DNA of 64,000 nt, taken from Stylophora pistillata. Its lineage: Eukaryota. The stretch lies in contig NW_019218252.1 of NCBI RefSeq assembly GCF_002571385.2, forward strand, positions 167,244 to 231,243. The letters run 5' to 3'. The position numbers and the translations under genes are program-made. Under the pieces are notes generated by a model that was given only the letters and a program-made list of their open reading frames with translations, was not told where the DNA came from and ran no database searches. How positions within the stretch are numbered: position 1 is the stretch's first letter; the number at the start of each line of letters is the position of its first letter. Shown piece by piece: positions 2,851 to 42,307 of the stretch.

Positions 2851-5093
<2,243 letters not shown>

Positions 5094-8000: not shown

Positions 8001-8262
8001 TTGTGGTGCGCATGCCAACCAGGAAGCGCGTTTTTTTGCGAGTAACCAACTCCGTTTTAGGTTTAAATCTGATTGGTTGAGAGGTTGAAAGGGGGATTCT
8101 AGACCAATCAGCAAGCGAGGTAAAGCAAGCTTACGATATTCCAGATTATTTTTTTCACTGAATTAAACAGCATTGTGAACAAAGGATTCCTCTCTGTTCG
8201 CGCACATTTTTTTTGCACCATGATTGGCTAGCTGTTTAAACAAATAACAGCCGCGCCTTGTG

Positions 8263-20200: not shown

Positions 20201-23200
20201 GCTAATAGTGCGACAACTTAGATGTTACAACAATTTCAATTTTTTTTCTGGTCAAAGTAGCTGGTGGAAATAAAAAACCACTAGTTAAAACTGAATTTCT
20301 TTTTTTCTGTGGCTAGTTGGCTACTGGTAGTGTCAAACCCTGCTCTATTATAAGTATGTTTTTTTTATTCTTTATACTGTTCTCTTTGCATGTTTTAATG
20401 TCCTGACAGGGTAAACATGTTTTACAGTAAAGAGCTGCTTAATAGTTGATGATCATTTCCTATATTCTCCTGACCTTTTTTTTTGATTCAGGGGTGACAT
20501 TGTCAGGAGAAATTAGATGCTAGTCACTCTTGGCATTTTTTTGTTAAAACCACTCACCACAAGACTCAGAGCTTTCTGATGCACCAGAGAGTGTTGATGC
20601 AGTTCCCGAATTCTTTGATTTCCCTGACATCTTTTTATCCAGTAATTGACGCTCACTTTGAAGCTTAGTGAGTTCATCATTAAGTTGTAGGGGTAACTTG
20701 TCAGATGCATTGTTTTTTTCAACTTTAATATATACTTTTCCTGGAGGAGTTTTATCTAGAATGTTGTAGATGTTTTCAACTGACAGTCCTTCCAGTTTCT
20801 TGTCATTAATTTCAAGGAGTTGATCACCTTTTTTTTTAATAAAACAAAACAAAACAAAACAAAAAAGAAGAAAAATTGAGAAAACCTTTTTTTTTTGAGC
20901 ATCAAAATTTATTGCATGTCAACATCGTAAGGATATTGTTAATGAAGGTTTTTTTTTACTCTTTTCTCCGCAGTTTAGCTTGCCATAGGCAAAAAACAGT
21001 AACCAGCAAAGGTGAACATTTATTTCATTTCAAGACAAGTATTTAATAATTTTGTTTGATTAAAGTAGCTGGCACTTTACATAAAAAGTAGCTTGTGAAA
21101 ATACCAGCCAGTTTGCCTTCTGGAGTTTTTTTTGGTTATGATAAACAGCAAAATCAAATTTGAAAATGAAAGTGCTGTGTCTGTTTTTTTTCTGTGGCTG
21201 AATAAATGAGTAGGAAGGTTTTACACGTCAGTAAGTTCAAAATTTTTTTTATGCTGTTAAACTGTTTGCATGGTAAGATCCCAAAAACCTAGAAAAAAAA
21301 AATTTTTTTAAAGGAATCTGATGGTTTATGTAACCATTCACTTTCATTGAAGTGTTTGCTTTTTTTTTCTTTCAATCCTATTCTTTACTTTCATCACTTG
21401 TCTGCTTGATGTTGTAAGGAGAAATTCTTTCTTGGTCATTCATGGGAGTTAAAGGGCTTAAGATGACGTTAAGTGTAAGATGTTGAAAATGAAAGGCTGA
21501 CAGCAAATTTTGTTGTCTATTTATGTTGTGCTTTTGTCAGTGGAGGGTGCAATAAAAAAATATAATTCACCTTAATCTCCCATCATTGTCTGCTGGTGTT
21601 CCTTGAATAACACACTGAACAAAGATTCCAGGTAGCTGATTTGATGGATGTTGCTCTCCTAGACCAATTCCTAAGCTGCTCCCAGGTTCTAAAAGCATGA
21701 ACAAATTAATTTTTTTTTTTTTGAGCAAGACCCTAGATAATTTTTTCACAAGCCTTTAAACAACTATATGAACCTTTTTTTATGGGCAATAAACAAGTTA
21801 CATGTATTGGCCACTGGTTCAAAGTAGTATGGCTACTGTTTGGCTGATAATATTAGGGTGAAACAAGTTTACTTCAAGAATCAAAAATAGAACACAGGGA
21901 AATCTCTTCAAAAACTGAATAAAAAATAGCTCAGACCATCACAATTTACCCTTTTTTTCTCTAGTCCTGGTTGCCTAATGATAACACTCTTTCTGTCACA
22001 TTCTGGTGATTTTTTTTATTGAAAGTACTTTCTGAGCTTACATTTAACCCTTAACAGGGCTCGATACTAACTCTTCAACTTACTAGCCAAGTGGCAAGTG
22101 ACATCTTAGATGTTACGACAATTTCAATTTTTTTTCTAGCCAAACTGACAAGTGGAAATCAAAAACCACCAGCCAAAACTGAATTACTGCTGGTCTGTGG
22201 CTAGTGGGCTACCATTAGCATTGAACCCTGCTTAAACTCCCAAGATTTTTTTTTTAATTCTCCGCTCTGACTGCTATACATTTCCTTGTAAAGTAGTCAC
22301 AAGAATTTGGTGTCAGATCAAGATTTATAACAACTTCTACCTGATAAGTTTGAGCACTCTCATTACTTGTTTGGTGGATGATGTATTGATTTTATGGGGA
22401 GAATTTACATGTTAGTCACTTATTTTTTTTTAATGGTTAACTCAGTCATTATATACATTAGACAATGCCTTGACCTTGTTCTTTTTTTTTTTTATTACAA
22501 TAAACTGAGAAAAAAAATTCTATAAATTACCCCTTTGAAGGTTTTTTTTTCCTTCTGAATTATTTCTTTAACAAGAAATATATGAACTAATCATTAGTGC
22601 AAGATTTGAGACAGGGACATAAACGTTTGTTCTTTCATAACTATTTATAATATTTTGATGCAGAAAACCATCCATGCCTTACCTATATAATTACTCATTT
22701 AACTCTTGACACTGATTATTTTGACTAAAATCCTTTAGAGAAATTATCAAACATGAAATCAAACTTAAAAGTGCTTATTTTTTTGACTAGTTCTTAATTT
22801 TTTTTTTTTTAAAAAATCATCATTAATTAAAGGTCTTTTTTTTTGCTCCTGTTGAAAGTGTTGGTGAAATAAAATACAATAACAAATATTTTATGTTTTT
22901 TTAACTAATCTCCTGAAAAATTTTAAATTTACTAGAACTAAAGGATATGCAAACTTTTTTTCAAATTCAAAACAAACCTTTATAAAGAACTATTTCATTG
23001 ATTTTCTCTTTCTTTTTTTTTTTCGGACGCAGCTTTCGAAACATTATTGGAGAAGACGAATTGCTGGAGCTGGTTGAGTCCGCTGTCACACCTCTGCTGT
23101 TCCGACGCAAACTTCCTGGTGAATTTCTGGGTGTTGTAAATGTTGATAAACTTGGAGCTCCAGGACTGTTTCTGTGCACTTTCAAAGTTACAATTCCTCT

Positions 23201-26200
23201 GCGAAGATTCTACAACCCAAGGATAGTATTTACTACAGCAAAGAATATTGTATAAGTTTCACCTGGTGAGTAAACTTCAGCAATGGATAGCACAATAGAT
23301 TGATAAGCTTTTTTTAGGAACTACTTTATTCTCCTACAATTTGATTATGAACTGCCGACTGAAAGTCAAAATAAAGGTGCAAAAAAATGTATATTTTGCC
23401 ATAAATTCTCAACAATTAAGATTTTGAACTGCGACCCTGTATGAATTGATAAAGTTTTCCTCTGTTTTCAATCTGTGTCAGCAATAATACTCTTTTGTTT
23501 ACTTTGATAAATCACTTGATCAATAACCTGGGGCAGGTGAATGTTGTACTTGTTTAATATTTAATCATAAATAGAAGTGATTGAAAGCCCACAGCCAGAA
23601 AGATTTTTTTTGTAGTTGAATATAAAGAAAATGTGATTTGTCAAATATTTTAGCAGTGCTCAAAACCCCAGATCTCCACAATTACTTTGTTAAAGTTTCT
23701 ATTTTAATTAGAGAGGCAGTTTCACACATTACCCATTATAGCAATGTTTTCAATTAAGCCATGGAGAATTTGTTTTTTCCCCCAGGAACAAACAAATGAC
23801 TTCATTTTGTTGACATTGGGAACAATAGCCAGCAATTTTTTTTTTTATTTATCCCCAAACACAAGAAAAAGAATATCAAATCAAATTCATCATTTCATCA
23901 GTAAGTGATTATCATAATAATCTGAGTTTCTCTGACATGTAAATAGGGTTGACTTGGTTTTTTTAATCAACATCAAGTTTTTGGATTCTCCACTTCTTTC
24001 CATCAACGTTTTAAGTTTTTTTTTTCTTAGAGAAAAAATAACCTCTTTCAATACTTATTCTTGACTAGCCAGAAAAAATTGCCAAAAATGGCTTTTGTTA
24101 ATAGTTTGGATGACTAATTAAGCAAATGATAAACTTAAACTAAAATTTCAGTAATTGAAAAATTTGATTAAAACTAAGTTAAATTCATTTGGATTTTTTT
24201 AACTCAATAAAGTCTTCTTCAGAAACTCATAAAAATGTTTGAAAGTTAAAGATTTTTTTATAACATTTGTGGATAACAAAAACAAAACTCTTAAGACAGT
24301 ATTTTGTTTATTGAATGTTAAGAAAGAATTCTCCAAATTTTCCCAAAGTCAGATGAATCATCTCTCTTTAACAGAACCATCCAATTCAAACTTTTAGATC
24401 AATGATTAACCTGAACACATAAAAAAAATTTTTTTTACAATTCTTTGTGAGATTCATGAACATGACAGTGAGAACTGCCTGCACTACTTACCTTTTGCTG
24501 TTGCTATTAATAATTACTAGATATAGAAAACAATTAATGATTATTTTTTTTTTATACAATTTATTAAGATCAATATAAAATCTGTCTGACTTATATTTTG
24601 AGTATTCACTCAACTCAAGCTGAAAGCAGTCACAATGAAACATACCAATCAATATATTCAAAAAATGAGTTTATGAATAGCCCATTTCCAAATTACCCTT
24701 GGCCTCTTTTTCAAAACGAGGCCTGGTGCTTAACCATTCTTGTAAAAATGAGTTTAATTTGCATGTGAATGGAAACTTCTAATTTTTTTAATGGATGAGC
24801 ACCAGGACTCGTTTTGAAAATGATGCCAAGGGTAATTCGGATTTTTTTTATTTGAATGCAATTTCCTAAGGGATTCCACTACTACGAACTATATATCAAT
24901 TTTTTTTATTGTTTATGAAACCTTTTTCATATGTGTAGCTCTAAAAAAGTTACCTAACATTTTTTTCTTGTAAATATGTTGATATCGCAAGGAGAAAAAT
25001 TCCATTTTGGTTGCTACTTTTTTTTAAAAAAATTCACCTCTTTTCACCTTCAAAAGTTCTCAACTCTGACCATTATTCATCCTTTACCTTAAAGGTGTCC
25101 AAGGCTTTCTGATGAGTGAAACCTTCAAAAGATGTTCCATTCACTGATAATACCTCATCACCTACAATTTGATTGCAAAGAACAAAGAAGATGAATTTGG
25201 AGGGCAGACTAGTGTAAACAAATTTAGAAATTTAACATTAAATCGACCTTCACATTTTTTTTGGCAAGAATTAAAAAAATTACTTTAACATCTAATATCC
25301 TTCATTTGCACTTTTTTTTTAAATAACAAGTAACCTTTTCTCATTCTTCCATCTGCTTCTGCTGCTCCACCATTTTTTTTATTCCCTATGTATACAGGCA
25401 TGTCGCCCTGAGGTGAGCCTTTTCCTCCAACAATAGTAAACCCGAGACCTTTTCCACTCATTCCCTTTACCAGAACAATGGTAACAATTTCCTCTTCCAT
25501 TGCTTTACTGATTCTTCTTTGTGTGCTGTCGTTGCTTCCCTTTCTCTTTTTTTTTTGCGAGTCCCGTTCATTACTCCCCACAAGATTTTGGGGTGTTGGC
25601 AAAGCTTTAGTCATTATGTTGGCGGGGGGATCCCCCAGATATCGTGCAGAAAAAGCGATTCCCATACCTCCTGGAGACTGAGGTCTTGGCAGGGAAGGTG
25701 AGATTTGACCAGGTTCTAGACTCATTTCACTTTTTGTAGGTTTCTCTTTAGGGGGTGAATTATTCAAGAAAAGGTTTGGTGAGTTTCTCTTCTTTGAAGC
25801 ATCTATAATTGGTGGGGATGGGGATGGTAGCTTTCCTGGTGAAGATTTTTTGGAAGACCCTTTGGAAAGTGGTTTATCCTCCAAAGTAACAGGTTCACTT
25901 TCTAAACTTTCTTCTCCTTTTGAAAGTAAGACATCTTTTGTGTTTGACTTTCCTAGTTCATTGGAACCATCAGATGAGGAGGAGCAGCTTCTGCCATTAG
26001 TCAACTTTTGTTCATTTCCATTTTTTTTGACATAATTTCCTTCATGATGTGACTTATCTTGCGAGTCTGTTGCATCAATTTGATTAATATTCTTTCCTGA
26101 ATTCAATTCTTCAGCTCTTTGCAAAAGATCATTTTCCATTGATTGTTGTAAAAGATTCTCAAATGACTTTGTGGTCCCTTTTCCAAAATTTTTATCAGCT

Positions 26201-29200
26201 GCTTTGTTCTCCTTTTCAATATGATCAGAGGACATTTTTCTACCTTTCTTCATCAAACTCTCTGCAGACTGCGCTCGAGGAAGGGTTTTTGAAATCTGTG
26301 TTCCAGTTCTTCCTGCTTTTTTTTCCAAAGACCTTTTTTTAAACCTTGATGCTGTCACCTTTTCCAACACAGACTGGCTTACCTTTGTGAAAAAAATAAA
26401 ACAAATAAAACTTCCATACTTGTGATTAAGATTTTTTTTTTTTAGATTGTAGTATAAAGTACTGACAGCAAAATACTTAATAATATAGAGTCTATCTGCC
26501 AAGGAATTATTCATGAGAAAACTGTTTGTTACCTGTGTTGAAATGACCAGTTGTATAAGCCTTGGTGATGCTCTAAGTAAGTCAACTGCCTCCTGTTGTG
26601 TGACGCCTATCAAGCTGTGGCCATTGATCCATAACAGCTCATCACCCTCCTTAAGGCGACCATCCCTAAATTTTTTTAAAGAAAACAAAATTTCAATTTA
26701 AAGTTAATTTGTTATAAGTAATAGTTATTGAAAGTTACCGATAAACATTTACTTGGATATATGTAGGTAAAATGAAATTCCAGTTTTCTCCCTTTAAGAA
26801 TTGTTAGTAATTAATAATGTGGGTGGAAATACTGGTATAAAAAACATGCAAACTTAACTAGTTACAAATATTTTTGACCCAAATTCATTTTAAGCTGGAA
26901 GATAATGCATATATCAAAAAGTGCATTTAGATTCATAGTATAGCAATAATATATAGTTTTAACAGTTTGTATGACCCAAATGCATCCCAGGCAGCTATAA
27001 TTCATTTAATAAATTTAATCCAAATTTTTTTCTTAACATCTATTTCAATCTACTGTTCAACTAAAATTATATTAATTTTTTTACTAAAAGAATCAATGCA
27101 TAAATTACAAATAATGGAAGGTTTATTCTTTAGGGTTAAATCTTTTTTTATCAGCATGGTTAGTAATTTTATCTTAAAACAGGATATTGGGTTATTTGCG
27201 CTTTTTTTTATTTTTGTAGAAAAAGCGCAAAATAAGTATTAAATATCATTATTATTATAATTTTTTTTCAATATTGAATTTGTTTTTAGATATTGAGTTT
27301 TGTGTCTTGGCTGTCATTGATTTTTTATGTCACAGTCACAATTTGAAATAATTTGCACCTGTAGAATTCCATCACTGTTACTTTATCTATACTGACTGTG
27401 TAACACTGATTTTCTAATATGCACAAAAAGTCTTGAATTTAAACTTGAACCAAGACAAGGTCAGGATTGTATACTTAGGAATTAACTCTTTGAATAATGA
27501 ATCTATTTGTAAGTAGTTGCTGCAACCAAATTTAAAAATCTGTATTCCTGTGAATGTATCATACCTTGTGAGTCTTTCTTCAATGTTTTACACAACAAGC
27601 TCAAATTGTGGTACTTAATTTTGATATTACAATGTCAATTGAAGGTTTCTCATGAAAAAAAATTATGATTTTTTTTTTTTTGATGTAGTAGTAACAGAAA
27701 CTCTACCTCTTCAGTTTCACATGTCATTATTGATTGTGAATTATTAAAAAAGCTGTATATGGTTCATTGAGTGAAAGAATATATTTGAACATTTGACCTG
27801 GCATAACTGTAAAACAATGCTGTTACATTAATCAATACATGTGAAATACCGCACCTTGCAGCAGCCCCACCAGGGCTCACATCAGACACAAACACACCCT
27901 TCTCTCCTGTTTCATGGTTGAGTTTCATTGATATTTGTACTCCAAGTCCACGGCTATCCTTTAAAATATGTATCTTCTTCACTCTGTTTTTCTGTGATGA
28001 AATATCAGGTGGACAATTCTCAAAATATGCAAAGCATCAAAACAATATATTTAATTACATGAAAATAAAATTTTAAAGTTCATTGTTTTTATTATTTCCT
28101 ATCATTTTCTAACATGACACTATAGTCAATAAAAAATAGTTTTAAGTCTGTTGACGTATCTAATTTTCATTAATTTTATTAAGGTCATTTAATATCTTTG
28201 TACACAGTGTAGGCCATACCTTAGGTAGCAAGACATGTCTGTTTTTACATCATAAATTATGCATTTTTTTAACTTATTCATGAAAGGATTTCCTATCATT
28301 TACTACGGTGCTGTTGCATCTGTTATTGCTTAGAATTTCATTTATTTTCCCACATAAGCACCAGTTACAAACTGAGTGTATTGATAAGTTACAATGAGTA
28401 AAAGTTGAATTCTGTGAATATAGTAGGGCTACACTTGGTCTCCAATATGCACGTCCACAACTGATCAGCCAATCTTCAAATTTTCTTTATATAAAATACT
28501 AAGACCATATTTACAAAATATTTCTCCCCAAAGAGACATTAGTCTGTTGCAAGTTCCATTAGTTCCAGCATTCAGTCACGATAAGTAATAACATAGGCTG
28601 GGATACTTATTACTAACAGTACATGTTTGAAGCTAGCCCTTTTTCAGTAAATGCACGGTTTGAAAACAGGAGTAAAAGTTGATGGTGTAGTCTGCTCACC
28701 CATGAGATTAGACTAGAGATCAAAGGGCTCCACTACTGTAGGTAATGAGGTCAAAATATCAGTCACTGTTGCCCACAACAGTCCTTCTACGGACTTCTCA
28801 ACGGGGATGACCAGACTACTTGTTCAATAAGTTATCACTTCTGTCAGATTTACAGTTGGGAAACTTATGAAATTGCAAGAACATATCACAAACATCTGAT
28901 TAAAATAATTAAAATTCTCTACTAGAAATGGCCTATAACATTTTCATCAATCTGTCAATTACAGGTGATAAATGGTTATTTATTTTAACACTATATCTGC
29001 AAAAGAATGTGAAATTTTTTAGAGTAAAAATTTTTTTATTTTAATCCTGTTAAAATTGACTTTTGCATTTCAAAGTGCAATCTTAGATATTTTTTTTTTT
29101 TAACCAAACCATGACAATAATGGAAAGAAAATACTCTTCTACCCTACTTTTTTTTGGGCCAGACGTGTAAAAGTCAAATTAAAAATTTGTTTGATTAAAC

Positions 29201-30505
29201 TTACAGATTTTTTTTTCTCAGAAGTGTTTTCATGTCTTGGAATAACACCATTCTTCACAGGTGTGATGTTGCTCCCACCAGGACCACGGAGAACTTTTAT
29301 TTTTAATTTTCCACTCCTCAAGGCACTCCCTAAGTACCATCTAAAACAAATCACTCCAATTAATATTAATTCGCGTTTACACATTAAATATCAGTTCATC
29401 TCAAAACCAAGACGTTATAAAATATTGTTTGTGAATAGCAAATGAAATACGTAACAATTGAGATTAAAAAATATATAATTTAATTCTGGCAATACTATTT
29501 CGGCGAGTTCTCTTCTGAAAATAAGTGTTTCATGCTAGAATTTGGATAGAAATTTGATATTATTAATTAATCGCCCTCTTTGTAGTCTAATTCTTATCAG
29601 GCGTCGAACGCAAATATTAATGCTGAGACAAGAATGTCGAGTACAAAAAACCTCACACAGCTGTGCATGCACAGGTAGCGATATTAAACGTAAACAAAAG
29701 GTCACACACAATGTGAGCCAATACAACTCAAATAAATGGCGCTAAAACGATCCCTATTTCAAAACAACAGACAAACATCCTCTACACCACCAGTGGTACA
29801 AATCTTCCAGCGTTTAAGTTCAATGAATAAATGATTTAGTGCCGAACAGTTCACAAGATTGCACTCAGATATAGCGTTAAGGTCCTAAATCGTTCGTTTC
29901 AGATTATAATAGTACACTCAAGGGAGAAATGGTTGTAGATGATACAACAGTTTTGTAAAGAAGCTTGACTATGATTTTTTTAATTCATTTATTCTTCGCC
30001 ATACAAAAATAGTACCTGTTGCGGTTTTTTAATAAACTTTGATGAAGCCTACGAGTTTTACCTTGCTCGCTCCAGGCTTGCTTTGGATAAATCGCGGCCA
30101 TTTATTTCCATTACTCTATCTCCAACTTCCAACAATCCATCCCGTTTTGCTTTTTTTTCCGGCAATAAATCGGCGATTCGAATATTTCCCAAGGCACTTC
30201 TTGCACAGCTTGGGCTGCTAGGATCTTTGTTTTCGAGCACGACTCCAAAATCTCCTGAGCACTCATCAAATTCGAACGATTTAGTGTCGCCTTCTCCATC
30301 CACGTCTCCGTTTCGAAGCGTATCTTCGGCCGCGGAAACCTTCTTTGATCGCGGAGAAAAAGCATCTGAAGAAGAAATCTTACCTTCTTTTTTTGTATTC
30401 AGTGTTAAACCACTAGTAAAATGGTCCTTGATGTTTTTCTGTAGTAGACATTCCTCCAATTTTTCCCGTCTTCGCAACCGAATCACAATAGGTTTGAGCT
30501 CGTTT
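8263..30505 (-). CDS. Giant multi-PDZ scaffold (~10 PDZ domains), PDZD2/pro-IL16-like. Approximate exons 30062-~30505, 29205-29340, 27855-27991, 26533-26666, 25334-26382, 25088-25161, ~22992-23210, 21571-~21690, 20558-20828, ~19374-19422, ~18780-18920, 17710-18397, 16023-17320, 10852-15727, 9712-~10475, 8263-8976.
   Basis: Repeated PDZ motifs (GLGFTIVGG, GLGLSVTGG, DGRLKEGDELLWING, GDKLVSVNG). The C-terminal PDZ (LEKGASGLGFSLGGGQDSLYGDAPI...LPYGPVVMKIRRK) closely resembles the IL16/PDZD2 C-terminal PDZ. Long Pro/Ser/acidic linkers. 5' end and small exons uncertain. Confidence 0.8.
24676..24852. mobile_element. Palindromic MITE (~177 bp)
   Basis: Left arm aatagcccatttccaaattacccttggc...ttttcaaaacgaggcctggtgct mirrors right arm agcaccaggactcgttttgaaaa...gccaagggtaattcgga[T7]tatt. 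Confidence 0.75.
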
Positions 30506-31344
30506 TTTTTTTATCTAGGTCACTAAACTTTTCATCTTTAAAATTCACACCAGAAATTCTCTGATTTTTTTCATGCTTTAAGGCGAAATGTTTTCTTTCC
30601 AACCGTAAGGATTCAACGTTTCTTTTTTTTTCCTTTGTTTCTGTTTGTACTGTCTTTTCTAAGTTAAATACAGTTGAATTACTTTTTTTTGACGTCATGC
30701 CCACGTACCACTCATCCCTTATGAAAATGTCTTTCTGTTTATATTGGCATGTTTCAGTTTTCTGTTTAAAGGATACAACATTATTCTTCCAAGCAATCCG
30801 AGCTTTCAACCTTTGGAAATTATCACTCTACAGCAGATATCGCAAAATGAAACATTCCTTTTTTTTTTGATCGAACTCATGCAAAAATGCGAACCCTACG
30901 GGGGCAGGGAAGAATATGGACCCCTTGAGGAGGGTCTGTGTCGTCTGGGTCAAGTCTGGCCTCTCGTGAGATACACGTTTTTTTAGATCACGTTTGACCT
31001 TTCAAAGTAATTTTCAAGTACCTTTTTTTCGTAAAATTTTTTTTTACAAATTGAAAAGGAGCCCGATTACATCCTTCACAGCCGTTTCCAATCTCTTTTT
31101 TTGTCGCACTCTCTCTGCGTGGAAACAAAACAAAAGCGGTGGTAGCAAGAAAAGAAAAAACGCGCGAGTGAGCGAACTAATGACCTCTGTCTTTCCCTCG
31201 CGCGTGCTTCACTTTTTTTTAGTCAAGTGCCGACTACTCCTGGTAAAGGAACTACGACGGTACCTTGAGACCTTTTTTTATATGTTTTTGCCAACACCTT
31301 AGGGCACAAACATTTCTGGTACGCTAAACAACACAACCCTGACC

Positions 31345-31731
31345 TAAGGCCCTGTTTACAAGCAAGGAGGGTAACCCTTGTGCTAGAGTTTTTTTTTCAG
31401 GAGGGTCAAAGATAGCCCGGGTTTACAAGCAAAATTTCACAGGCAGGGTTACCCTACCACCCGGGACAACGTACCTATTTATGGTAACCGCACGCATTGT
31501 TATCAATGTTTTTTTGGTCTGGAAACAAGTAAAAAGTTGTCCAGGGTAGGCGAGTTATCCCCAGCAGTTTTTTTACAAGGCAGCTAGGGTAACCCTAGTG
31601 CTAGGGTAACCCTAGCTGCCTTGTAATTTTTTTGATGAAAAAAAGAAGAAATGTGGGAGCGTTAGGGTAACCCTCCTGCCAGGGTTTTTTTTGCACTAGG
31701 GTTACCCTACCTGCTTGTAAACAGGGCCTAA
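31345..31731. mobile_element. MITE with 17-bp TIRs and TAA flanks (PIF/Harbinger-like), with internal GGGTAACCC palindromic subrepeats
   Basis: taa|ggccctgtttacaagca ... tgcttgtaaacagggcc|taa, plus many gggtaaccc/gggttaccc units. Confidence 0.8.
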
Positions 31732-32604
31732 GACGTCAGCGAATTTTTTTTGAAGTCCAAGTGCAGTATTGACTAAGTAACCTAAACGAACTGACCAATG
31801 AAGAGCGCAAGTTCAAATACAGTGGTAGTGCGCTGGTGTGGGGTATCACAAGATAATTTGGTTTTTTTTACTGAGTTCATCATGTGAATTTGCCATCATT
31901 TCGTCAGAGCGAAATTACGAAGGGCTCACGCTTGAAATGTCGGCTTTAGAGACCCTTTACGGCGTCCAATTCAAATTATCTTTTTTTAACTGCAAATTTA
32001 AGACTAAATCGAACCCACCTGTAACGCTGGTGAACTGCTTTTTTTTGATTAAGGATATTGGCGGATAAACCAATTACGCTAGGGAGCTGACCAAGGGAGT
32101 TAGTGAACTGACATGAAACGTCAGTAAACAGACTTGCGACTTTGGCGAACTAGCCCATTTTTTTGGCGAACTGACCCCAAACTAAACAGAAATGGAAGCG
32201 AACTATAAGCGAAACTGTCAGAAAACTGGATACATGTAGAGTCGGTGTAAAGGATAGTAAGTTGTCTTCGGATACAGGCGAGAAAAAAAGTGGTCCCGAA
32301 AACAAGAGGAAGTGTGCATAAAACTTGGACTGATAACTAATCAAGAATAGAGAACTCGGCAGAGGCTTCGTTGTTTCGGTAAAAGGACTTTTACACTTTC
32401 CGTTTGCTGTCTCTCTCTTCAAAGAGTGGCTAGATCCAAGAAACAATTAAAAGCCTGTAGACTTAGGCCCTGGTGAAATCAAAACAAGATATGAAAGGAT
32501 CTCAAATCCATCTTGATGAATGATTGACTAGCCAGAAAGAAGAGACATCAAGGACACGCATTTTTCTGGTTGAAATTTTATTTTACAGCTCTCAAAACAG
32601 GGCT

Positions 32605-34948
32605 TTACTCCCTAGATTTCATCTTTTCACGTGCCATCTTCTTCTTGGACACCTTTTTAACCTCGACCTCATCCTCGCCACGAGGAACCACTTGCTCGCG
32701 TTCAGCTAGGATCATCTCTATGTGGCATGGGGAGCTCATGTAGGCTGTTTTTTTCAAGGTTAGACTAGTTTAAGTTTTACAAGCATATCACTTCCATAGC
32801 TTATCTTTTTTTTTTCCATCAGTGACCAAGACAGAATTTCTCGTTACAATATCACTACAATGTCGAGCACACAAGTGATGAAAATAATGAATGAATTAAA
32901 CGTGAATTAGGAGATTGATAGTTGTTTTTTTTCCAAATTCTCCCCCCCCAAAAAAAAACATTCTAAGAGCTGTATGGCAGACAGTAAGGAGAATTTTTAT
33001 TGAGATCTTGGGAGTGAAACAAATAGGAGCTTACTACTCCAATTTTTTTGGATACATAAATATTAGTTACTAGATGAGAGATCCATGGGTAGAAATTGTG
33101 CCTGAGATTTTGGGCAAGGCCTGAGAAATGTCAATTACTGTCATCACAAACAATCCTAAGAAGACAATCCTTAACTACAGTATCACAAAGATGCTGAAGC
33201 AATCAAACCTTTTGCTGAAGTGACATTCTGAAGACTTGAGAAATATTGCCTGCCTATACCCTCCCCATTGCTTAAATGTTTTTTTAGAAACAAAGTGACT
33301 TACGATTGATACGTCCATGGGCTCTGTAGGTTCTCCTCCTCATCTTGGGAGCAGCATTGACTTGAATGTGCTCAACCACCAACGAGTCCACATCCATTTT
33401 TTTGATACAGAAACAAACACAGAGGACAATGAGGGAAGACTGTGCAGGGCTAAATTTTTTTTATACTGGTAGAATCACTCATGTAATCATAGAGATTTAG
33501 GGTTCCAAATTTCCATCATCTGGTTGCTAAGGCAATTGAAAAGGAACTTGGCCGCCACCAGAATTCCTGGCCATTTTTTTCAAGTCCTGTTGATGTTCAT
33601 CATGTAAGCCAGTAGTCAAGAAATTAAATATTTTTTTTTTTTCTTATGTGCTTTTATATACTCAGCTGGTGATTGTTCACCAAAAGGAATGTTTTTTTCA
33701 AAGAAACAACCAACAAAACTTTGTGTTTTTCTATTTCACAGTGAGGCATCCAATAACCAAAAAACTCACTTTAAATTCAGCATTGCTCTCAGCATTTTTG
33801 AGGAGCTGATTTTTTTTCTCTGCACTTTTCTTTGGCCAGCGGCCCTGGGATCCTGGAGCATTGAAGTTTTTTTTTTGGAAATGTAAATAATGTAAGTTTA
33901 TTTTCTCAATCATTACCTCTCCCAAGATTTTTTTAGTAATTCTCCTTTAAAACTAGCATACGTTTTTTTTTTTTCTTGTAAGTTAGTTTTTTTTTGCTGA
34001 TAAGTTTTTTGATTCCCAATACCAGTTCACAAGATAAGGTAGCTATTTTTTTAGGAGAAGTTACACTCTAATCAAGTCATGAAGTGTTACGTATAGAGAA
34101 AGTCTGGTGTGCTAGGATTATATAGAGGGAAATATCAGTCTCCTTTCTATTAAGCAGTTCTACACTGAAATTTGGGACTCTATATGATAAATAGGGCAGC
34201 AGACCTGATGGGAAAGGCTCCATTTTTTTAGTCACTGCAAATTAAACACTAGCATATAGCAGATTGAGAAATAACTTCTTATTTTTTTAGTTTCCAACTA
34301 TTAATTTACAGAAGACAAAGCCAATAGAGAGGATCATGCATGACATTGGTAGCTTTGGTTGATATGTCAGTTATTACTTCTACCAATAGTATACTGATAT
34401 TTTTTTATATCAAGACACAAGTTGACTATTGATCATCAGCCAATCAATGGACAACTATGGACCAGCCGTTGTTTTTGAAAAGTGACTGGCTTTCAGCAGA
34501 TATATTGCCCACCCATCCACCAACTATCGGCTGAAACATATCAGCCGAGGCCACCCATAGTAAGCTTGGCGGCTAATTTTTTTCTTCATGGTGGCGTTAA
34601 GGTACTTGGGAGAGCATTTTAAGAATCGTGGACTTTGGAAGTTCTTCAGTAAAGCCAAGTTATTTCAAACACATCGTACACGTAAATGACAAGTTTTTTT
34701 TTATTATGGGAGACATGGTATACATATCATACCTGAGCTTTACGTCCCACGCCACCATTGAATCTTCGGAAGGGAATGATCTGCTTCTTGGCAATAACAT
34801 CCTTGAGATATCTGTTTGCCTTACGTATGTGCATACCCTTGATGGCCACAGCCGTCTCGTGTGTGTTCTTGTTTTTTTCACGGAGGTTAGAGCCTCGTGC
34901 TTTACAAGACTTGGTTGGATTCTCCGGATCTTTTTTTTAACGAGTCAT
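32605..34948 (-). CDS. RPL17: 60S ribosomal protein L17 (uL22). Exons ~34732-34948, ~33766-33872, ~33304-33401, 32605-32744. Disrupted as written by T7 tracts.
   Basis: [42 protein letters not shown]...GGVGRKAQ; [22 protein letters not shown]; [37 protein letters not shown]. Confidence 0.93.
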
Positions 34949-35336
34949 CTTGAGTGACCTTTACCTGCAAACACATCGTGCATCGACATAATGGTTTTAA
35001 GTCTATCATATTATGCAAGGAAATCAAAGGGAAATTATATACATAGCTTTTTTTTTTTCACTCGGATACCACACAGTCCTTCAGACAAAACGAAATAATC
35101 TTCGAAAAATGCTAGGAATACTTAGACATGTTTCCCAAAGTTAGCAAATAATTTATTGTGGAGTAATAGATTCACTATCAGCGCGATTTTTTTACATTTA
35201 AAGTAATACTTCATTTATGTTATTGGGCAGAAGTACGCACTGATGTTGAAACTACAAACATCGGAAGTCTACCGAAAATTGAAATTTTTTTTGGGGAGAT
35301 AATTTGAGATTTTAACAACATATTGAAGTCAATCTC

Positions 35337-35498
35337 ACCTTCGAAGAGGAAGGTTGAAAGAGGACATCTACCCAGACTTCTTTTCGATATGACTAGCTCA
35401 CTACGCAAGCGCATTCATCAATTCAAAATGGCGTCTGATTCGTATCGCTAGTTGCAAGAACTTTTTTTGGTTTCCCTGGCCCTGTCTTGTAGTTCACG
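35337..35498. promoter_or_regulatory. Compact bidirectional promoter shared by RPL17 and the NPL-FKBP gene, including the RPL17 pyrimidine-rich (5'TOP-like) first non-coding exon
   Basis: Minus strand cctttcaaccttcctcttcgaag|GTGAGA at ~35337-35362. YY1-like AAAATGGCG at ~35425-35433. FKBP ATG at 35499. Confidence 0.6.
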
Positions 35499-38400
35499 AT
35501 GTTTTGGGGTGAGTATACCATTTTTTTCCTTTTTTAGTTCCTTTTCCATATGATCAAAATCTAAAGAGTGGAAAAGCGACTCCTCCAAACTGTAATATTT
35601 GATCAGCTAGATGTAGAGTTGCGCGCGGCATCGGGTTGAATAAATTGTTTGGTTGAGTACAAACACAGTAATCGTTTAAAAAAATCCACTTTTAATTTAC
35701 AACAATTATAAATTTTATAAAGAAGCTATAAATGGTTTATATATATAAGGCATGTATAAAGCAAATGCTGCTTCAATATTGGCATTTTAGAACGGCCAGT
35801 GCGCGCTCAACCGTATTTGCACAGCTTATGGTCTTTAACACGTGGAACATATTTGTGAGCTGGAGAAAACGTGTAAAAACTGCCCAAGGTGAAACCTAGC
35901 ATACTGTATGTTAGATAAAGTTTAGTTGAGGAGATTGCTAAAGCTGTGCTCTTGGAAGAATCATTGGAGACCGGAAGGCTCTCGATTCAGTACCAGCTGT
36001 TAAACCTTCAACCCGGCCCCTTGGAGTGATTTAAATGTAGCTCCTTCTTACGAGTCCAATGTTTTATCTTGCAAAGAGGTTAGGAGAACAGACAAACTTA
36101 TCAGTTCGAAGGCTTGTCTTGAATTAACACCTAATTTACAAGGAAATGTCAGGTAGTCAATGGGGTAAATTACTTATCTGATCTAAGAATAATTTTATAT
36201 ATAATAGCTTTCATCAAAGTGCAGTTATGCAAGTTTCTTTACAACAATTGTTAGTAGCCTGTGGTACCTGGACCCTACTATGACATAGAGAACAGTTAAG
36301 GTTTTATTCCTTGGAGTGTACCATGGACCTGTCAAAAGAACAGTTTTTACTTCCATACTTATTTTGTTCTCAGGGGTCACTCTTGATTCTGGAAACCGCT
36401 ACACCCAGACAGTGGAAAAGTCATTTCATTTATCAATGGCTGCTCTGGGCTTTCAGAACTTTTCGTCAGTACCAGTCACAGTAATGGTTGAGGTAGATAA
36501 AGCTCAGTTTGTACTGTGCACATTTTTTTTTGGAAAAATTCCACAACAGCCTTTAGACTATTGTTTTACAGAAGGAGAAGAGATAACTTTCTTTACAGAA
36601 GGCCCTGGGGATGTACATCTAACAGGTTTGTTCTGTTTTCTTGTTTTTGGTCACTATCATGATGGAGTAATTAGTCATTTTTTGGAATTTCTTTATTGAA
36701 TTTTTTTCAAGGAGGAATAAACAGGCAGACATAACCATATACGAAATGTAGGCAGAAGGTTTTTTTTTTTTATTTTGCTTTTTATTTTGCTTTTTATTTT
36801 GCTTTTTATTTTGCTGGCTTTTTTTTGGATTAGAAATTCATTATACTGTGTTCTTGGTGACACTGTGTGAGTTTCCATTTTTTTTTGTCTAGAGCATGTG
36901 CTTTTATTTTCTGTCAAGGGAGCAGGGATGGTGTAGTTTTTTTAACGCTTGCCTCCAACTGCTGTGACCTGGGTTTGATTCCCCAACCTGGTGTCTTTTT
37001 TTGGTTGAGTTTTATTGTTGGTTCTCCTCCTGCTCTGAAGGTTTTTCTCTGGGTCCTCCAGCTTTCCTACCTCCAAAAACAGCATTCCAAATTCCAATTC
37101 AATCCAGAAACAGTGGACAAGAAGGGCCACCTCATGGAATGTCAATTGCTATTGATAAATTGTTATTCCCATTCTATTAGATCACAGATATTGACATGAT
37201 GTACTTGTTTTTAAAAACTCACCTGTATTTTCATTGAATTGTGGTCTCGCTGTAGCATGTTACACAAACATGAACCCAATAATAATAAGCTTTCCATTAA
37301 ATGATAATACTTCATGGATAGGTTATTTAATGGAAGAACCAAGTACTTTGGAATTTGAAGAGTCTGCAGAGGAAGGAAGCAATTCTGATTCGGCAGAGGA
37401 GGACGATGAATCATCCAGTGAGGAAGTGACTCTTGGAGACTTATTTCAAAGTGGAGATTTGATTGGTGATGGCAGTGATGATGAGGATGAAGAGAGCGGA
37501 GATGTGGACTGGGACCCGTTGAAGGATAATCCAAAGAAAAAAAAAACAAGCAAGAAAAAGAAGAAGAAAAAACAGGCTGAGAATTTTTTTTTAAACAATA
37601 TTATATCTCTAATGGATGTTGAACAAGCTGAAGTAACTATGTCAAATGATGGTACGAGTGGTGAAAATGAAGATAGTACTGGAGGGCAGAATAGCACTCA
37701 ATCTGAAAATGAACTCAGAAAGAAAGATGGAAACAAGAAAAAGAGGAAAACGAGTGAAACAGAAAATCAAACAATTGAAAATGGATTTAAATCAGCTAAA
37801 AAACTCAAGAAAAAAGCCAAGAAAACTCAATTAAATTCACCAAACAGTGATGGCAAGATAGAAAAGACAAAAACTCAGGATTTTTTTAGTGGGCAAACTT
37901 CATTAGATACTAGCTCACCTACAAAAAACATTGACACTCAAGTTAAACAAGAAACACAAATGAATAAAGAAAAGGTGACACAACCGAGTTCTGGTAAACA
38001 GAATGATCAAGCACAAGCCACACCGGTAAGTATTTCTCAGGGTTGTAGCTAAGAATTTACACTGCTGGCAGAAATTTCAGGTGAGGAGGCTCAAAGGTGG
38101 GGAATGATTGTAAGTGTGTAACCTTAGAAGTGCCCATTGTAGTTTACCAAGCAATTGCCGGCCAAAAATCTAGCCTTTTTTTACTGCTTTTTCATTCAGT
38201 GAATTTCACAGGCACAGGTGCTTAGTGACAACCCTTTTTTTTTGCCTGATATTATGGAAAATTTTTGATTAGCTGTCTTTTCATTGTAAGTAATTTTTTT
38301 AGGGTCATTGCAGGTGAAAAGAAACATGGAAGGCTGCAAACTTTTGTTTTCCTTGGTTTAGAGGTAATCATGAATAAAATTTTTTGAAAAGATGGCAGTC

Positions 38401-40442
38401 TTGTTTGGTGTTGTGTAGTCAGTGTATTATTAATGTTGGCATAGTTCCAATGATAATCATTGGCATAATCTTTTTTTAGGAATATTTTTCTGCTTGATAT
38501 GGATGACACAATAGTTTGCAAAATTAACTTTTTTTTAAATAATTACTCTGGGATCTTGTGATGTATTTTAAGCAGGCAAAGAGGAAAATTTTTTTAGGAG
38601 GAACTGTGTTTGAGGACATTACAAAAGGAACAGGACCAGTGGCCAAAAAAGGACAGATGGTAAGGATGTACATAAATAATACGCAGCAGTACTTGTATCT
38701 TATTAACCAAGCGTGAGGGCTGTACTGGGAGAATATCGGCCTGAGGTCTTGACAGTACAGACCTCACTACGTTCGGTCTGTACAAAAAAAGACCGAGGGC
38801 CGATATTCTTCCAGTACGGTCCCGAGCAAGCTTGGTTAATAAGAGATTTATTATACGACTGAAGTTCAAAGGGACACAGGTGTGGTATCATTCGGGACCA
38901 TTTGGGACAGTGTCCGGTCAAATGCTGACAGAATATTGACCGGCAATAGAGCATTTTGATTGGTTGATTTTAGTTATTGGCCCTCTGACTGCCCGAGTTG
39001 TGTAATAATATAATGTACATGCCATGATCTTCACATATTTTTATGTGATCTACTTACAAAAACAAACTGTGTCTTCATAATTGTGCTACCATAATACTGC
39101 AACTGTCAAGCATTGAACACTGAACAAAAAATGTTGTGGTCTTTGTATGGCTATCTTATTGAGACAGTTTAAGCACAATTAATGTTTGTCCATGAAGTTG
39201 CAGTAAGTCAGTTGTGATATTTCATAAACTGGAAGTGGTAAGTTGGTGATTCAAGTAAACCACAAGAGAGCACCTGAATTGATCAATAGAATATTTAACC
39301 TTTCAGCTGTGGTTTTAAAGGTGTTTGTAGATCTTCCTTCTTGTTTGTTTGTTTGTTTTTTCTTGTTTTTTGTTTCATTACAATTTTTTTTTTAATTTCT
39401 TTCAACAGGTTCATGTATATTATAAAGGAAATTTAGCAAAGAATAAAAAGCAGTTTGATGCTTGTCTGAGTGGACGTCCATTCTCATTCAGAGTTGGTGC
39501 AGGAGAGGTCATACAAGGCTGGGATCTGGGTGTCACTGGTAGGTGTTTGAACATTTATTCTGCCAAGGCAATCTTCCTTTTAATTTGAATTTGAAGCCTA
39601 GAATTTCTTTATGCCAAAAACTGATATATGTCAAAATTAATTGCGAGTCAACCAAGGTTGTTCTTTTTCACACAGGAATGCAAGTAGGTGGAAAAAGAAG
39701 ATTAATAGTGCCTCCATCACAAGGGTAGGTTATCTGTTACAGTATCCTGGAGACATCTTTGATACGCAACGAACTTAATGTAGTGCTTAATTTGATCATG
39801 TTATGTGAAAGTACCCCACACATGCTTTTTGTAACAAGTAACTACCCCAGGTGAACTTTGCAGCCATTTTATTAGTAATCAAGTTTGTCAACTAGGGCAC
39901 CTGTTGAGCTCAGTCAATGTTACAGGTGAAAATGGCAATTACTGTCACATTACACTGGGGCACGTATCACAATGCTACAGGTGAAAATGGCAATTACTGT
40001 CACATTACACTGGGGCACGTATCACAATGCTACAGGTGAAAATGGCAATTACTGTCACATTACACTGGGGCACGTATCACAATGCTACAGGTGAAAATGG
40101 CAATTACTGTCACATTACACTGGGGCACGTATCACAATGCTACAGGTGAAAATGGCAATTACTGTCACATTACACTGGGGCACGTATCACAATGCTACAG
40201 GTGAAAATGGCAATTACTGTCACATTACACTAGGGCACGTATCACAATGCTACAGGTGATATCCTCAATGTAACAGTCACTTCAAAACTTAGTGACAGCC
40301 CTGGTGCAGAGTCTCGTACAATATCTTACAGAGTTGATGTGTAAATATGATTGTCATTTGCAGATATGGTCATAAAAAGATGGGACCAATTCCACCAAAC
40401 AGTACATTGGAGTTTGAAGTTCAACTTGTGAAACTTCAGTAA
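35499..40442 (+). CDS. Nucleoplasmin-like + FKBP-type PPIase nucleolar histone chaperone (FKBP39/Fpr3-4/AtFKBP53-like). Exons 35499-35508, 36374-36625, 37322-38025, 38576-38659, 39409-39538, 39676-39724, 40364-40442.
   Basis: MFWG start; NPL core (FHLSMAAL, LCT..GKIPQQPLD, GPGDVHLTGY); acidic then Lys-rich linker; FKBP domain (VYYKG, FD, F.VGAGEVIQGWDLGV.GMQVGGKRRLIVPPSQGYG, IPPNSTLEFEVQL). Confidence 0.9.
36918..37150 (+). mobile_element. tRNA-derived SINE copy in FKBP intron
   Basis: gggagcagggatggtgtagt (A-box-like) ... gggtttgattcc (B-box-like) ... ggtttttctctgggtcctccagctttcct ... ttccaaattccaattc, typical of anthozoan SINEs. Confidence 0.65.
38699..38843. mobile_element. Short palindromic MITE
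   Basis: ttattaaccaagc...gtactgggagaatatcggcc mirrors ggccgatattcttccagtac...gcttggttaataa. Confidence 0.75.
39916..40259. repeat. 55-bp minisatellite, ~6.2 near-identical copies, in the last FKBP intron
   Basis: Unit tacaggtgaaaatggcaattactgtcacattacactggggcacgtatcacaatgc at 39921, 39976, 40031, 40086, 40141, 40196 and partial at 40251. Confidence 0.95.
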
Positions 40443-42307
40443 TATACTAAATCAACTGAGACATGCTACTGTTATGCAAATCTGCTTTCCACATGTGCAA
40501 ACTCAGACCATTTCTACAAATTTGTAAGTTGGAGTTTTGATGGTCTACTTACGAAACTGTAATAATATACTACCAGTACCTGTAAATCGACTGTCAAGTG
40601 AGTCAGTTGCCTACATGTACATTGAATAACACTAGCATGTGAAGGACTGATATACCAAAACTACCACATCTTGAGTGAGAATAATTATCCTTCTTGCTTT
40701 CAATTCAATAACATTCTGCAATAGAGATATCCCCTCTGAGGTGGTTATTTCAGAATTTTATGATTGATTCTTTATCAGTTATCAAATTTCACAACCCTGC
40801 TGCAGAAAGCCACCATTTTCCTGTCATTATTTTAGCTCATTTTCTTCCATCATAATTTCATTTTCAAATATTGTTCCTATGCAAGACTCATGGTTGTAAA
40901 AGGTACTTGTCATTTATTCTTATAAAAAGGCATGTATGTGTCAGAGTTTAATGTGATGAACACTAGCTTTTCTTGCATGCATTTTAACTATTTCTTTCTT
41001 TAAAAGATTTTTCACTTTTGAAACTCCTATCATTTTAACAATATTTTATATGAAGAAAGTAACAGGTACATTTATTAGTTGATGGAAAAATGTAATAAAC
41101 AAAAGTATAAATTAACAAGTGTCCTCAATTGTACTAACAAAATTTGTTAGACTTAATGAAGAAAACAACCTCTGAGCTTTTCCCTTTGGATAAAGCTCAT
41201 GGTTTAGTAATGGTAATAGGATTGAGTGGCATCCAATTTGGTCGGAGTGTAAACAAAATTAGATGATTGTGCCACAGGATTCTGATTTGTTCATTGTGAG
41301 TATGATTACAGACCAAATTGGACAACATAAAGACTTCTTGCCAATTAATCATAAAAATTACAATTTCTGAGAAAAGAAGAATAGCCAAGTGATGAAAGAA
41401 AAGGAAAATTACATTTAAAGTCTGACAAAGGTGACATAATTTGTTTAACCTATTGACGTCCAGTGTGCCCGTAAGTGCCCATGTGGACCCACACTCTTTC
41501 TACACCTTGTGACGTCATCCCTTTTAACCCTGTAGCATGACTTTGAACACGTACTCGAACAGGTTGAAAATATCTTACAAACGAAACCAGAATGAGTGAA
41601 ATTGAATGAAGGAGATTGGAGAAATAGCCAAAAAACCATGTAACTTTGACCTGAAAATCTGCACGAAANGGGCAGGAGAAAGAGAGAAAAGTAAAAGAAA
41701 TTTTGCTTTCTGCGCGTGCCCGAGATTTTCAGACTACCATTTTGCATTTGGATTGAAAGGCTGTTGAGTGTACAAGCTGTCAATGGGTTTGTGGTAAGTT
41801 TGAGCTTTTAAAACCACAACAGTGACCCAAAATCTGCTCGACTAGCTTCAAAACACAGTTTTTCACAAAAGCTGTGTCTATTAATGGGTTAATGTAACTC
41901 TGAAATTGACTACAACCAACTTTGAATTTGATTGGTTGATGTAAACTACACCTTTGAATCTGATTGGCTTATTAAACTGTCTGATAACAAAATGTCCAAT
42001 AAGAAACTGTCCAATAACAACTTGGCAAGTGAATTAGTGGAAAATAGTAGTTTTTTTTTTAAACCAATCACAGTCAAGGAGATTGCATATTTTACGATTA
42101 AACAAGATATCAAACTGCAGTTAGAATAGCTTCCTACTTGGCCACAACTTGAATTAATGGCTGACGTCCTGTTTGAAATTCATTAAATGTAACATCTGAG
42201 CATGGAGGGGTGACTGATGCCATTGTTCAGAAGATTCAAATCATCAAAGCTGGTGAGGCATGTGAGGGAATATACACTGATGACACAGTGATGTTGTGAT
42301 GTTTTCA

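What the first reader, a model, noticed from the sequence alone, without database searches (positions are those of the whole stretch)
33397..34939. RPL17 is knocked out on paper by lattice tracts
The tract at 34931-34937 turns codon 4 (Tyr in RPL17 MxRYS) into TAA (ATG ACT CGT TAA). The tract at 34872 turns LRVHFKN into LREKNKN, and 33810 turns SAEFLL into SAEKKN. Tracts at 33869 and 33397 erase two 3' splice-acceptor AGs. Outside lattice sites the gene looks well conserved, unlike a decaying pseudogene. uL22 is essential, so either the tracts are not in the living genome, or another copy or a repair/editing process must exist.
Basis: partly seen in the sequence, partly recalled or inferred. 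Interest (0 to 1): 0.8.

Follow-up and report, generated by a model that had tools for sequence, protein, structure and literature searches.

The report
RPL17 broken only by assembly artefact
The coral's essential ribosomal protein gene RPL17 looks knocked out only because this assembly has runs of seven T's stamped over the true letters every 59 bases; DNA and RNA reads show that the living gene is intact, spliced and highly expressed.

Summary
A minus-strand, four-exon RPL17/uL22 gene lies at about window 32565-34975. Six 7-base T tracts (plus strand) hit it. They make codon 4 read TAA, turn VHF into EKN and three residues after SAE into KKN, erase two acceptor AGs and overwrite one polypyrimidine tract.

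The tracts belong to a 59-base lattice: 250 of 649 sites are occupied between 362 and 38595, against 0.24 expected by chance. Each tract replaces letters without changing length. The lattice is confined to one N-delimited piece of the scaffold (window 1-41668). Other pieces of the same assembly carry similar lattices with different settings: A26 at period 59, A7 at about period 61.

Contigs from two separate DNA-like studies, RNA contigs and raw RNA reads all show ordinary letters at every tract that the output listed. 128 of 149 differences in the best run are T>N. More than 1,200 spliced reads cross each of the three introns. The acceptor AG of exon 3 is seen restored in DNA.

The only other uL22-domain locus in the assembly is mitochondrial MRPL22. 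Because DNA and RNA agree, no editing or repair is needed. The tracts are an assembly or data artefact. The true letters at codon 4 fell in the truncated part of the table and are inferred. Earlier scan notes on this same window (s1-776286, s1-776300) describe the same lattice.

The parts
32565..34975 (-). RPL17 / uL22 gene (cytosolic large-subunit ribosomal protein), four coding exons. The 5' end is approximate.
   Evidence: Exon pieces match solved eukaryotic uL22 chains colinearly at residues 7-72, 78-105, 108-137 and 139-184. Pfam PF00237 is matched. Many RNA molecules end at 32565/32566, and depth falls upstream of about 34975.
34733..34948 (-). Exon 1 coding part, 72 codons, ATG at 34948-34946, donor GT at 34732-34731.
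   Evidence: E 1e-30 to vertebrate RPL17. RNA joint 33868^34732 with 1250+39 raw reads.
33770..33874 (-). Exon 2. In the assembly its first 6 bases and its acceptor AG lie under a tract.
   Evidence: RNA reads carry CTTAG (plus strand) between 33868 and 34732, so the mRNA reads ...CAG GCT AAG AAC TTC = AQAKNF. PDB match.
33304..33400 (-). Exon 3. In the assembly its first 4 bases and its acceptor AG lie under a tract.
   Evidence: DNA contigs read A.CCC at 33397-33401, which is AAGGGAT on the minus strand, so the AG and the Gly-Leu codons are restored. RNA joint 33396^33769 with ATC between, 1468+42 reads. PDB match.
32605..32744 (-). Exon 4 coding part with the stop TAA at 32607-32605. The 3' UTR runs to about 32565.
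   Evidence: RNA joint 32744^33304 with 1311+28 reads.
34931..34937 (+). T7 lattice tract. It overwrites the third base of codon 4 and codons 5-6, giving TAA AAA AAA.
   Evidence: Coral relatives read MTRY(S/A)(T/S/A)D here.
34872..34878 (+). T7 lattice tract. It overwrites codons 24-26, so VHF reads EKN.
33869..33875 (+). T7 lattice tract. It overwrites the start of exon 2 and the G of the acceptor AG.
   Evidence: bridging letters CTTAG.
33810..33816 (+). T7 lattice tract. The three residues after SAE read KKN.
   Evidence: The solved chain 9eho_P has FLL in these three positions (SAKFLLQLL against the window's SAEKKNQLL).
33397..33403 (+). T7 lattice tract. It overwrites the acceptor AG and the first four bases of exon 3.
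   Evidence: rows 33397-33401, in X1, X4 and X8.
32748..32754 (+). T7 lattice tract. It overwrites the polypyrimidine tract just upstream of the exon-4 acceptor.
   Evidence: all of X1, X4 and X8 read CCGAAAA here.
1..41668 (.). The N-delimited piece of scaffold C468 that carries the lattice. Tracts are seen from 362 to 38595: period 59, plus-strand T7, 250 of 649 sites.
   Evidence: The N run C468:165771-167243 ends at the window start, and the next N is at window 41669. There is no lattice in sampled C468 pieces outside it.

Best explanation
The 7-base T tracts are not part of the coral's genome. They were written over the true letters, one for one, at a fixed spacing of 59 bases along one contig-level piece of this assembly. 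The process is unknown. I infer a software or data-handling fault at the contig stage, followed by partial repair and small indel edits. The RPL17 gene underneath is a normal, single-copy, intron-containing, highly expressed uL22 gene. No editing, repair or second copy is required.

Shown: the lattice, the length-preserving overwrite, the confinement to N-delimited pieces, ordinary letters in independent DNA and RNA data, and correct splicing.

Inferred: which step produced the tracts, and whether they are in the public record or only in the copy held by this scan.
For: 1. Lattice. 250 of 649 sites at period 59 hold T7, against 0.24 expected. Only 12 T>=7 runs in the block lie off the lattice.

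2. Length-preserving overwrite. The reading frame and exon lengths are intact (558 nt = 185 codons plus the stop codon), and every lesion sits on a tract. Exon pieces align colinearly to solved uL22 chains, with unaligned spots only at EKN and KKN.

3. Reads.
- Single contigs of about 3.96 kb from X1 (2024 study) and X4 (2016 study) cover introns and exons evenly.
- They differ from the window mostly by T>N. In X1 the counts are 59 T>A, 42 T>C and 27 T>G, against 21 changes of all other kinds. X4 and X8 show the same pattern.
- Every tract listed in the table reads ordinary letters at full depth.
- RNA joints at all three introns have 1250-1468 raw reads each. They carry the letters that the assembly lacks (ATC, CTTAG).
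- Exon depth is about 1000-1600 reads per bin and intron depth about 0-9. The strand bias fits a minus-strand mRNA.

4. Tied to assembly units.
- The window's block lies within an N-delimited piece.
- C19:1083771-1094741 lies between two N runs and holds 154 on-lattice A tracts (core 26 nt) at period 59.
- C9:264378-273470 lies between Ns and holds T7 at period 59.
- A C8 piece holds A7 at about period 61.

5. Internal control. An inverted repeat at 24687-24738 / 24790-24841 stops exactly at the tract 24842-24848 and resumes for 4 bases after it.

6. Relatives. Other corals read Tyr at codon 4 and VHF at the second tract.
Against: - The rows for the two exon-1 tracts (34872, 34931) were among 129 rows cut from the read table. 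The true codon 4 of this species was therefore not seen directly.
- X1 and X4 are marked '?' and 'DNA?'. I call them DNA because depth is even across introns.
- Logan contigs show presence, not absence, and I cannot show that either run comes from the individual that was assembled.
- The cause of the lattice is not identified.
- 39% occupancy, clustering (runs z = -4.3) and a mild preference for AT-rich flanks are unexplained beyond the guess of partial polishing.
Confidence: 0.95

Rival explanations
1. The tracts are real DNA, and the mRNA is restored by RNA editing or some other repair process.
For: The mRNA is intact and abundant while the assembly is broken.
Against: DNA-like contigs of two separate studies already hold the same ordinary letters as the RNA at every listed tract, introns included. 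A 59-base lattice that ignores exons, introns, repeats and intergenic DNA alike, and that stops at assembly gaps, is not a property of a chromosome.
Confidence: 0.01
2. This copy is a dead pseudogene, and a second, working RPL17 lies elsewhere.
For: There is an in-frame stop at codon 4 and two acceptors are missing in the assembly.
Against: All lesions are on the lattice and none is off it. The introns are kept. RNA reads splice this very locus at high depth. The DNA search finds one copy only. The only other PF00237 locus, C108:133825-135219, matches mitochondrial MRPL22.
Confidence: 0.01
3. The tracts are absent from the public assembly. They were introduced later, in the copy of the genome that this scan holds, by file corruption or deliberate marking.
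For: Period, tract length and strand differ from piece to piece (59 or about 61; 7 or 26; A or T), like parameters set per record. No paper describing such an artefact was found.
Against: Phase slips of 1-2 bases inside the block, patchy GC-dependent occupancy and confinement to N-delimited pieces, even pieces bounded by a single N, look more like a contig-stage fault followed by polishing than a late overwrite. This rival does not change the verdict on RPL17.
Confidence: 0.25

Closest known systems
Eukaryotic cytosolic ribosomal protein uL22 (RPL17; Pfam Ribosomal_L22, PF00237)
   Same: All four exons align colinearly with solved vertebrate and invertebrate uL22 chains over residues 7-184. 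The gene is single-copy, intron-containing and very highly expressed.
   Different: Nothing biological differs. Only the assembly text differs, at six overwritten 7-base tracts.
Local assembly, gap-filling or polishing errors that break gene models (the kind that lead annotators to flag low-quality proteins; from general knowledge)
   Same: The reference differs from the reads of the same species. The lesions vanish when reads are laid, and they are tied to assembly units.
   Different: Ordinary errors are scattered indels or collapsed repeats. Here a homopolymer of fixed length is stamped in place at a fixed period (59, or about 61) along whole contigs, with no length change. I know of no described artefact of this form, and one paper search found none.
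Hard masking of sequence (N or X written over letters in place)
   Same: The overwrite is length-preserving and ignores the content beneath it.
   Different: The letter written is T (or A on the other strand), not N. It is written on a lattice, not on repeats or chosen features.
Periodic A/T clusters of nematode genomes (PATCs, about 10-base periodicity; from general knowledge)
   Same: Periodic A/T runs occur on one strand.
   Different: PATCs are real DNA, lie in introns and non-coding DNA, follow the helical repeat and never overwrite codons. Here the period is 59, codons are overwritten and reads lack the tracts.

Membership tests
uL22 / RPL17 (PF00237 Ribosomal_L22, cytosolic eukaryotic form) | Match to the family profile above the curated cut-off | tested here: met
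   The exon 3 piece scores 37.9 bits against a cut-off of 28. The genome search gives 39.2 bits at the same exon. Exons 1 and 2 match the adjoining profile positions below the cut-off, as expected for fragments.
uL22 / RPL17 (PF00237 Ribosomal_L22, cytosolic eukaryotic form) | Full-length colinear similarity to solved cytosolic uL22 chains, including the eukaryote-specific C-terminal tail | tested here: met
Exon pieces match residues 7-72 (E 1e-30), 78-105, 108-137 and 139-184 of 184-residue RPL17 chains.
uL22 / RPL17 (PF00237 Ribosomal_L22, cytosolic eukaryotic form) | Expressed and correctly spliced | tested here: met
   Three joints with 1250-1468 raw reads each. Exon depth is about 100 times or more that of introns.
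Decaying or processed pseudogene | Lesions spread without regard to the lattice, loss of introns, or no expression | tested here: not met
   All lesions are on lattice tracts, the introns are present, and the locus is transcribed and spliced.
RNA editing or programmed sequence repair | RNA differs from the genomic DNA of the same organism at the sites | tested here: not met
   DNA-like contigs X1 and X4 and RNA contigs X8 carry the same non-T letters at the listed tracts. Whether they come from the same individual was not established.
Assembly or data artefact | Absent from independent read sets of the species | tested here: met
   four runs from four studies. T>N makes up 128 of 149 differences in X1. 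The rows for 34872 and 34931 were not displayed.
Assembly or data artefact | Bound to assembly units rather than to biological features | tested here: met
   In four of four examined cases the blocks start after an N run. In the three where the far end was examined they also stop before the next N. The tracts cut across exons, introns, repeats and intergenic DNA alike.
Assembly or data artefact | The step of the pipeline that produced it is identified | not testable with these tools
   No access to the public record, the assembly methods or the assembler's intermediate files.

The most novel reading that the evidence does not exclude
The T7 tracts are truly present in the DNA of the one individual or clone that was assembled, for example through an unknown periodic in-place rewriting of DNA, while other colonies of the species are intact. 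The evidence does not strictly exclude this, because I could not show that any laid run comes from the assembled individual.
Probability: 0.01. Interest if true: 0.9.

Novelty: not a real feature. Interest (0 to 1): 0.12.

Why it matters
Biologically nothing is unusual. The coral has a normal RPL17, and no editing or repair system needs to be proposed.

The practical point is quality control. Lattice matches were listed on four scaffolds of this 398-Mb assembly (C8, C9, C19 and the window's C468), and four pieces were examined in detail. In-place poly-T or poly-A stamps there will create false stops, false Lys/Phe runs and lost splice sites in any gene they cross. Gene models, pseudogene calls and 'editing' calls made on this assembly in such pieces are unsafe. 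Other findings of this scan that fall in lattice pieces should be read with that in mind.

Tried and rejected
1. Second cytosolic copy. A DNA search of the whole assembly finds one locus. The PF00237 search finds only this locus and C108, which is mitochondrial MRPL22.

2. Editing. Rejected because DNA and RNA agree.

3. Direct view of codon 4 in this species.
- A pattern scan of metagenome contigs across the tract found nothing.
- The word search with exon 1 found only other corals (91% identity over the whole piece in alignment A1; 1 of 62 residues differs off the tracts). Their contigs are 81-87% identical in exon DNA, so they give the expected residues (Tyr, VHF) but not this species' letters.

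4. Genome-wide count of the lattice. Four T7 in a row at period 59 gives 3826+6860 matches. The same pattern at period 60 gives 4386+5997. Long tracts (26 nt) match at many offsets and periods, and the tool's own control is identical by symmetry. These counts therefore show only that such blocks occur on several scaffolds, not how many there are.

5. Cause of the lattice. I considered periods as odd k-mer sizes, A as the zero of a 2-bit code, and 60-column line wrapping. None fits all of period 59 or about 61 with tract lengths 7 and 26. Left open.

6. Literature. One full-text search for such an artefact found nothing relevant.

7. Exons were joined only in a local script to check length and frame.

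8. One listed hit was a human protein. It was not fetched or used.

Full report
**What is in the sequence**

Read on the minus strand, window 32565-34975 holds a four-exon gene.
- Exon 1 runs 34948-34733 (ATG at 34948-34946, 72 codons, donor GT at 34732-34731).
- Exon 2 ends at 33770.
- Exon 3 ends at 33304.
- Exon 4 starts at 32744 and ends with TAA at 32607-32605.

With the exon starts given by the reads (33874 and 33400), the four exons sum to 558 nt, which is 185 codons plus the stop.

Each exon piece was searched separately by reference. They match solved eukaryotic uL22/RPL17 chains colinearly:
- exon 1: residues 7-72, E about 1e-30;
- exon 2: residues 78-105;
- exon 3: residues 108-137;
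- exon 4: residues 139-184.

Pfam Ribosomal_L22 is matched above its cut-off by exon 3. It was built only inside a local script, to check length and frame.

**The lesions**

- Codon 4 reads TAA (34939-34937).
- RVHF reads REKN at the 34872 tract.
- The three residues after SAE read KKN at the 33810 tract.
- The tracts at 33869-33875 and 33397-33403 cover the places where the acceptors of exons 2 and 3 must be.

A sixth tract at 32748-32754 replaces the polypyrimidine tract in front of the exon-4 acceptor.

Of the 11 lattice sites in or touching the exons, 6 are occupied and 5 are free. The free ones carry normal coding letters. In the alignments to solved chains, the only unaligned spots are the tract codons.

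**The lattice**

Plus-strand runs of T>=7 number 281 in the window, against 42 for A.

From 362 to 38595 they sit on a 59-base lattice. The core is exactly 7 bases; longer runs are explained by neighbouring natural T's. 250 of 649 sites are occupied, where chance gives 0.24. Only 12 T>=7 runs in the block are off the lattice, a density no higher than in the lattice-free remainder of the window.

The phase (start mod 59) steps 8, 7, 6, 5, 6, 4, 3 along the block. That is what small indels introduced after the lattice was laid would produce.

Occupancy is clustered (runs test z = -4.3). It is somewhat higher where the flanks are AT-rich: 49% in the lowest GC quartile against 31% in the highest.

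**The lattice follows assembly units, not biology**

The window is G000:C468:167244-231243.
- An N run at C468:165771-167243 ends exactly at the window start, and the next N is at window 41669. The lattice therefore lies inside one N-delimited piece.
- Sampled 10-kb pieces elsewhere on C468 have none.

Other scaffolds show the same kind of block with other settings:
- C19:1083771-1094741 lies between two N runs. It has 154 on-lattice A tracts (core 26 nt) at period 59, the first 14 bases after the gap and the last 17 bases before the next.
- C9:264378-273470 lies between an N run and a single N. It has T7 at period 59 with constant phase.
- A C8 piece after an N run has A7 at about period 61.

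Inside the window, an inverted repeat (24687-24738 / 24790-24841) is cut off exactly by the tract at 24842-24848 and resumes for four bases beyond it.

**Reads**

The organism is a coral. I laid four runs from four studies on window 32400-35300 at 85% likeness.

*DNA-like runs.* X1 (2024) and X4 (2016) each give one contig of about 3.96 kb across 32825-35284, with even depth over introns and exons. I take that as genomic DNA.
- They differ from the window at 122 and 131 letters.
- By kind, X1 has 59 T>A, 42 T>C and 27 T>G, against 21 changes of all other kinds. X4 and the RNA contigs of X8 show the same pattern.
- The 23 occupied tracts in that span cover 161 positions. 128 T>N changes are what one expects if essentially all 23 are replaced by ordinary sequence.
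- Every tract shown in the table reads ordinary letters at full depth in X1, X4 and X8. For example, 32748-32754 reads CCGAAAA.
- 33397-33401 reads A.CCC, which is AAGGGAT on the minus strand. That restores the AG acceptor and the Gly-Leu codons of exon 3.

*Raw RNA reads.* X23 (about 2% of the run) gives three clean joints: 32744^33304 (1311+28 reads), 33396^33769 (1468+42) and 33868^34732 (1250+39).
- The last two carry the letters the assembly lacks (ATC and CTTAG on the plus strand).
- The mRNA therefore reads ...CAG GCT AAG AAC TTC... (AQAKNF) and ...AAA GGA TTG GAT... (KGLD).
- Exon bins hold about 1000-1600 reads and intron bins about 0-9.
- First mates lie on the plus strand about 25 to 50 times more often, which fits a minus-strand mRNA in the usual stranded library.
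- Many molecules end at 32565/32566, about 40 bases after the stop codon.

**What was not seen**

The table of other letters was cut after 41 rows, and the rows for 34872 and 34931 were among the 129 not shown.

The true codon 4 of this species is therefore inferred from three things:
- the T>N tally;
- the full RNA depth across those bins;
- coral relatives, all of which read MTRY(S/A)(T/S/A)DPENPTK and LRVHFKN.

Those relatives are other species. Their exon DNA is 81-87% identical and their introns cannot be aligned. A pattern scan of metagenome contigs across the tract found nothing.

**Other copies**

The 2-kb locus occurs once in the assembly. A PF00237 search of the whole assembly finds only this locus and C108:133825-135219. 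The latter matches mitochondrial MRPL22 chains, E about 3e-10. There is no second cytosolic RPL17, and none is needed.

**Conclusion**

The tracts are an in-place overwrite tied to contig-level pieces of this assembly. They are absent from independent DNA and RNA data.

How they arose is not shown. My best guess is a fault at the contig stage, later partly repaired and shifted by polishing. That would account for the N-bounded blocks, the per-piece settings, the phase slips and the patchy occupancy. I cannot rule out that the overwrite exists only in the copy of the genome held by this scan (about 1 in 4). Either way there is no biological feature here.

Genome-wide counts from the pattern tool are not usable as a measure of extent. 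A period-60 control gives similar numbers, because 26-base tracts match at many offsets. One literature search found no description of such an artefact.

Noticed in passing
G000:C19:1083771-1094741 (L016, L020): A gap-to-gap piece with 154 on-lattice poly-A tracts (core 26 nt; 71 runs are exactly 26, the rest up to about 31) on a 59-base period, at about 83% occupancy. Nearly half of this piece is overwritten. Any gene there is unreadable in this assembly.
   Followed up: partly
G000:C9:264378-273470 and G000:C8:~1413391-1419857 (L022, L024): Further lattice pieces. C9 has T7 at period 59 with constant phase and ends 4 bases before a single N. C8 has A7 at about period 61. Period, tract length and strand therefore vary from piece to piece.
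   Followed up: partly
window 32816-33019 (intron 3 of RPL17): A short interspersed repeat with very high summed depth in all runs (word depth up to about 280,000 in X1). It has many internal skip joints and loose ends that share a 'TAACCCTTTAACTC' motif. It looks like a very abundant MITE-like element. RNA reads of both strands also pile up there.
   Followed up: no
window 24687-24841: A 52-nt inverted repeat, 88% complementary, with 51 nt between the arms (a MITE-like hairpin). Its right end is cut by the lattice tract at 24842-24848. It is useful as an in-assembly control for the overwrite.
   Followed up: yes
G000:C108:133825-135219 (+) (L003, L004): The mitochondrial ribosomal protein uL22m (MRPL22) gene. 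It is the only other Ribosomal_L22 locus in the assembly.
   Followed up: partly
window 33389: C>T on the plus strand (GTG to GTA, synonymous Val in exon 3). It appears in about half of the raw RNA reads (975 of 1926) and in both DNA-like contigs. This is an ordinary polymorphism, not editing.
   Followed up: no
window 34949-35284: The RNA contig of X8 runs on upstream of the ATG to 35284. Raw RNA reads of X23 drop to under 1 per bin beyond about 35018. The mRNA therefore probably starts near 34960-35018, and the long contig probably reflects read-through or DNA in that library.
   Followed up: no
window 26, 35.5-36.5 and 38.6-41.7 kb: Long runs of unoccupied lattice sites inside the affected piece. 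Occupancy is clustered and mildly GC-dependent. No explanation beyond possible partial polishing.
   Followed up: partly
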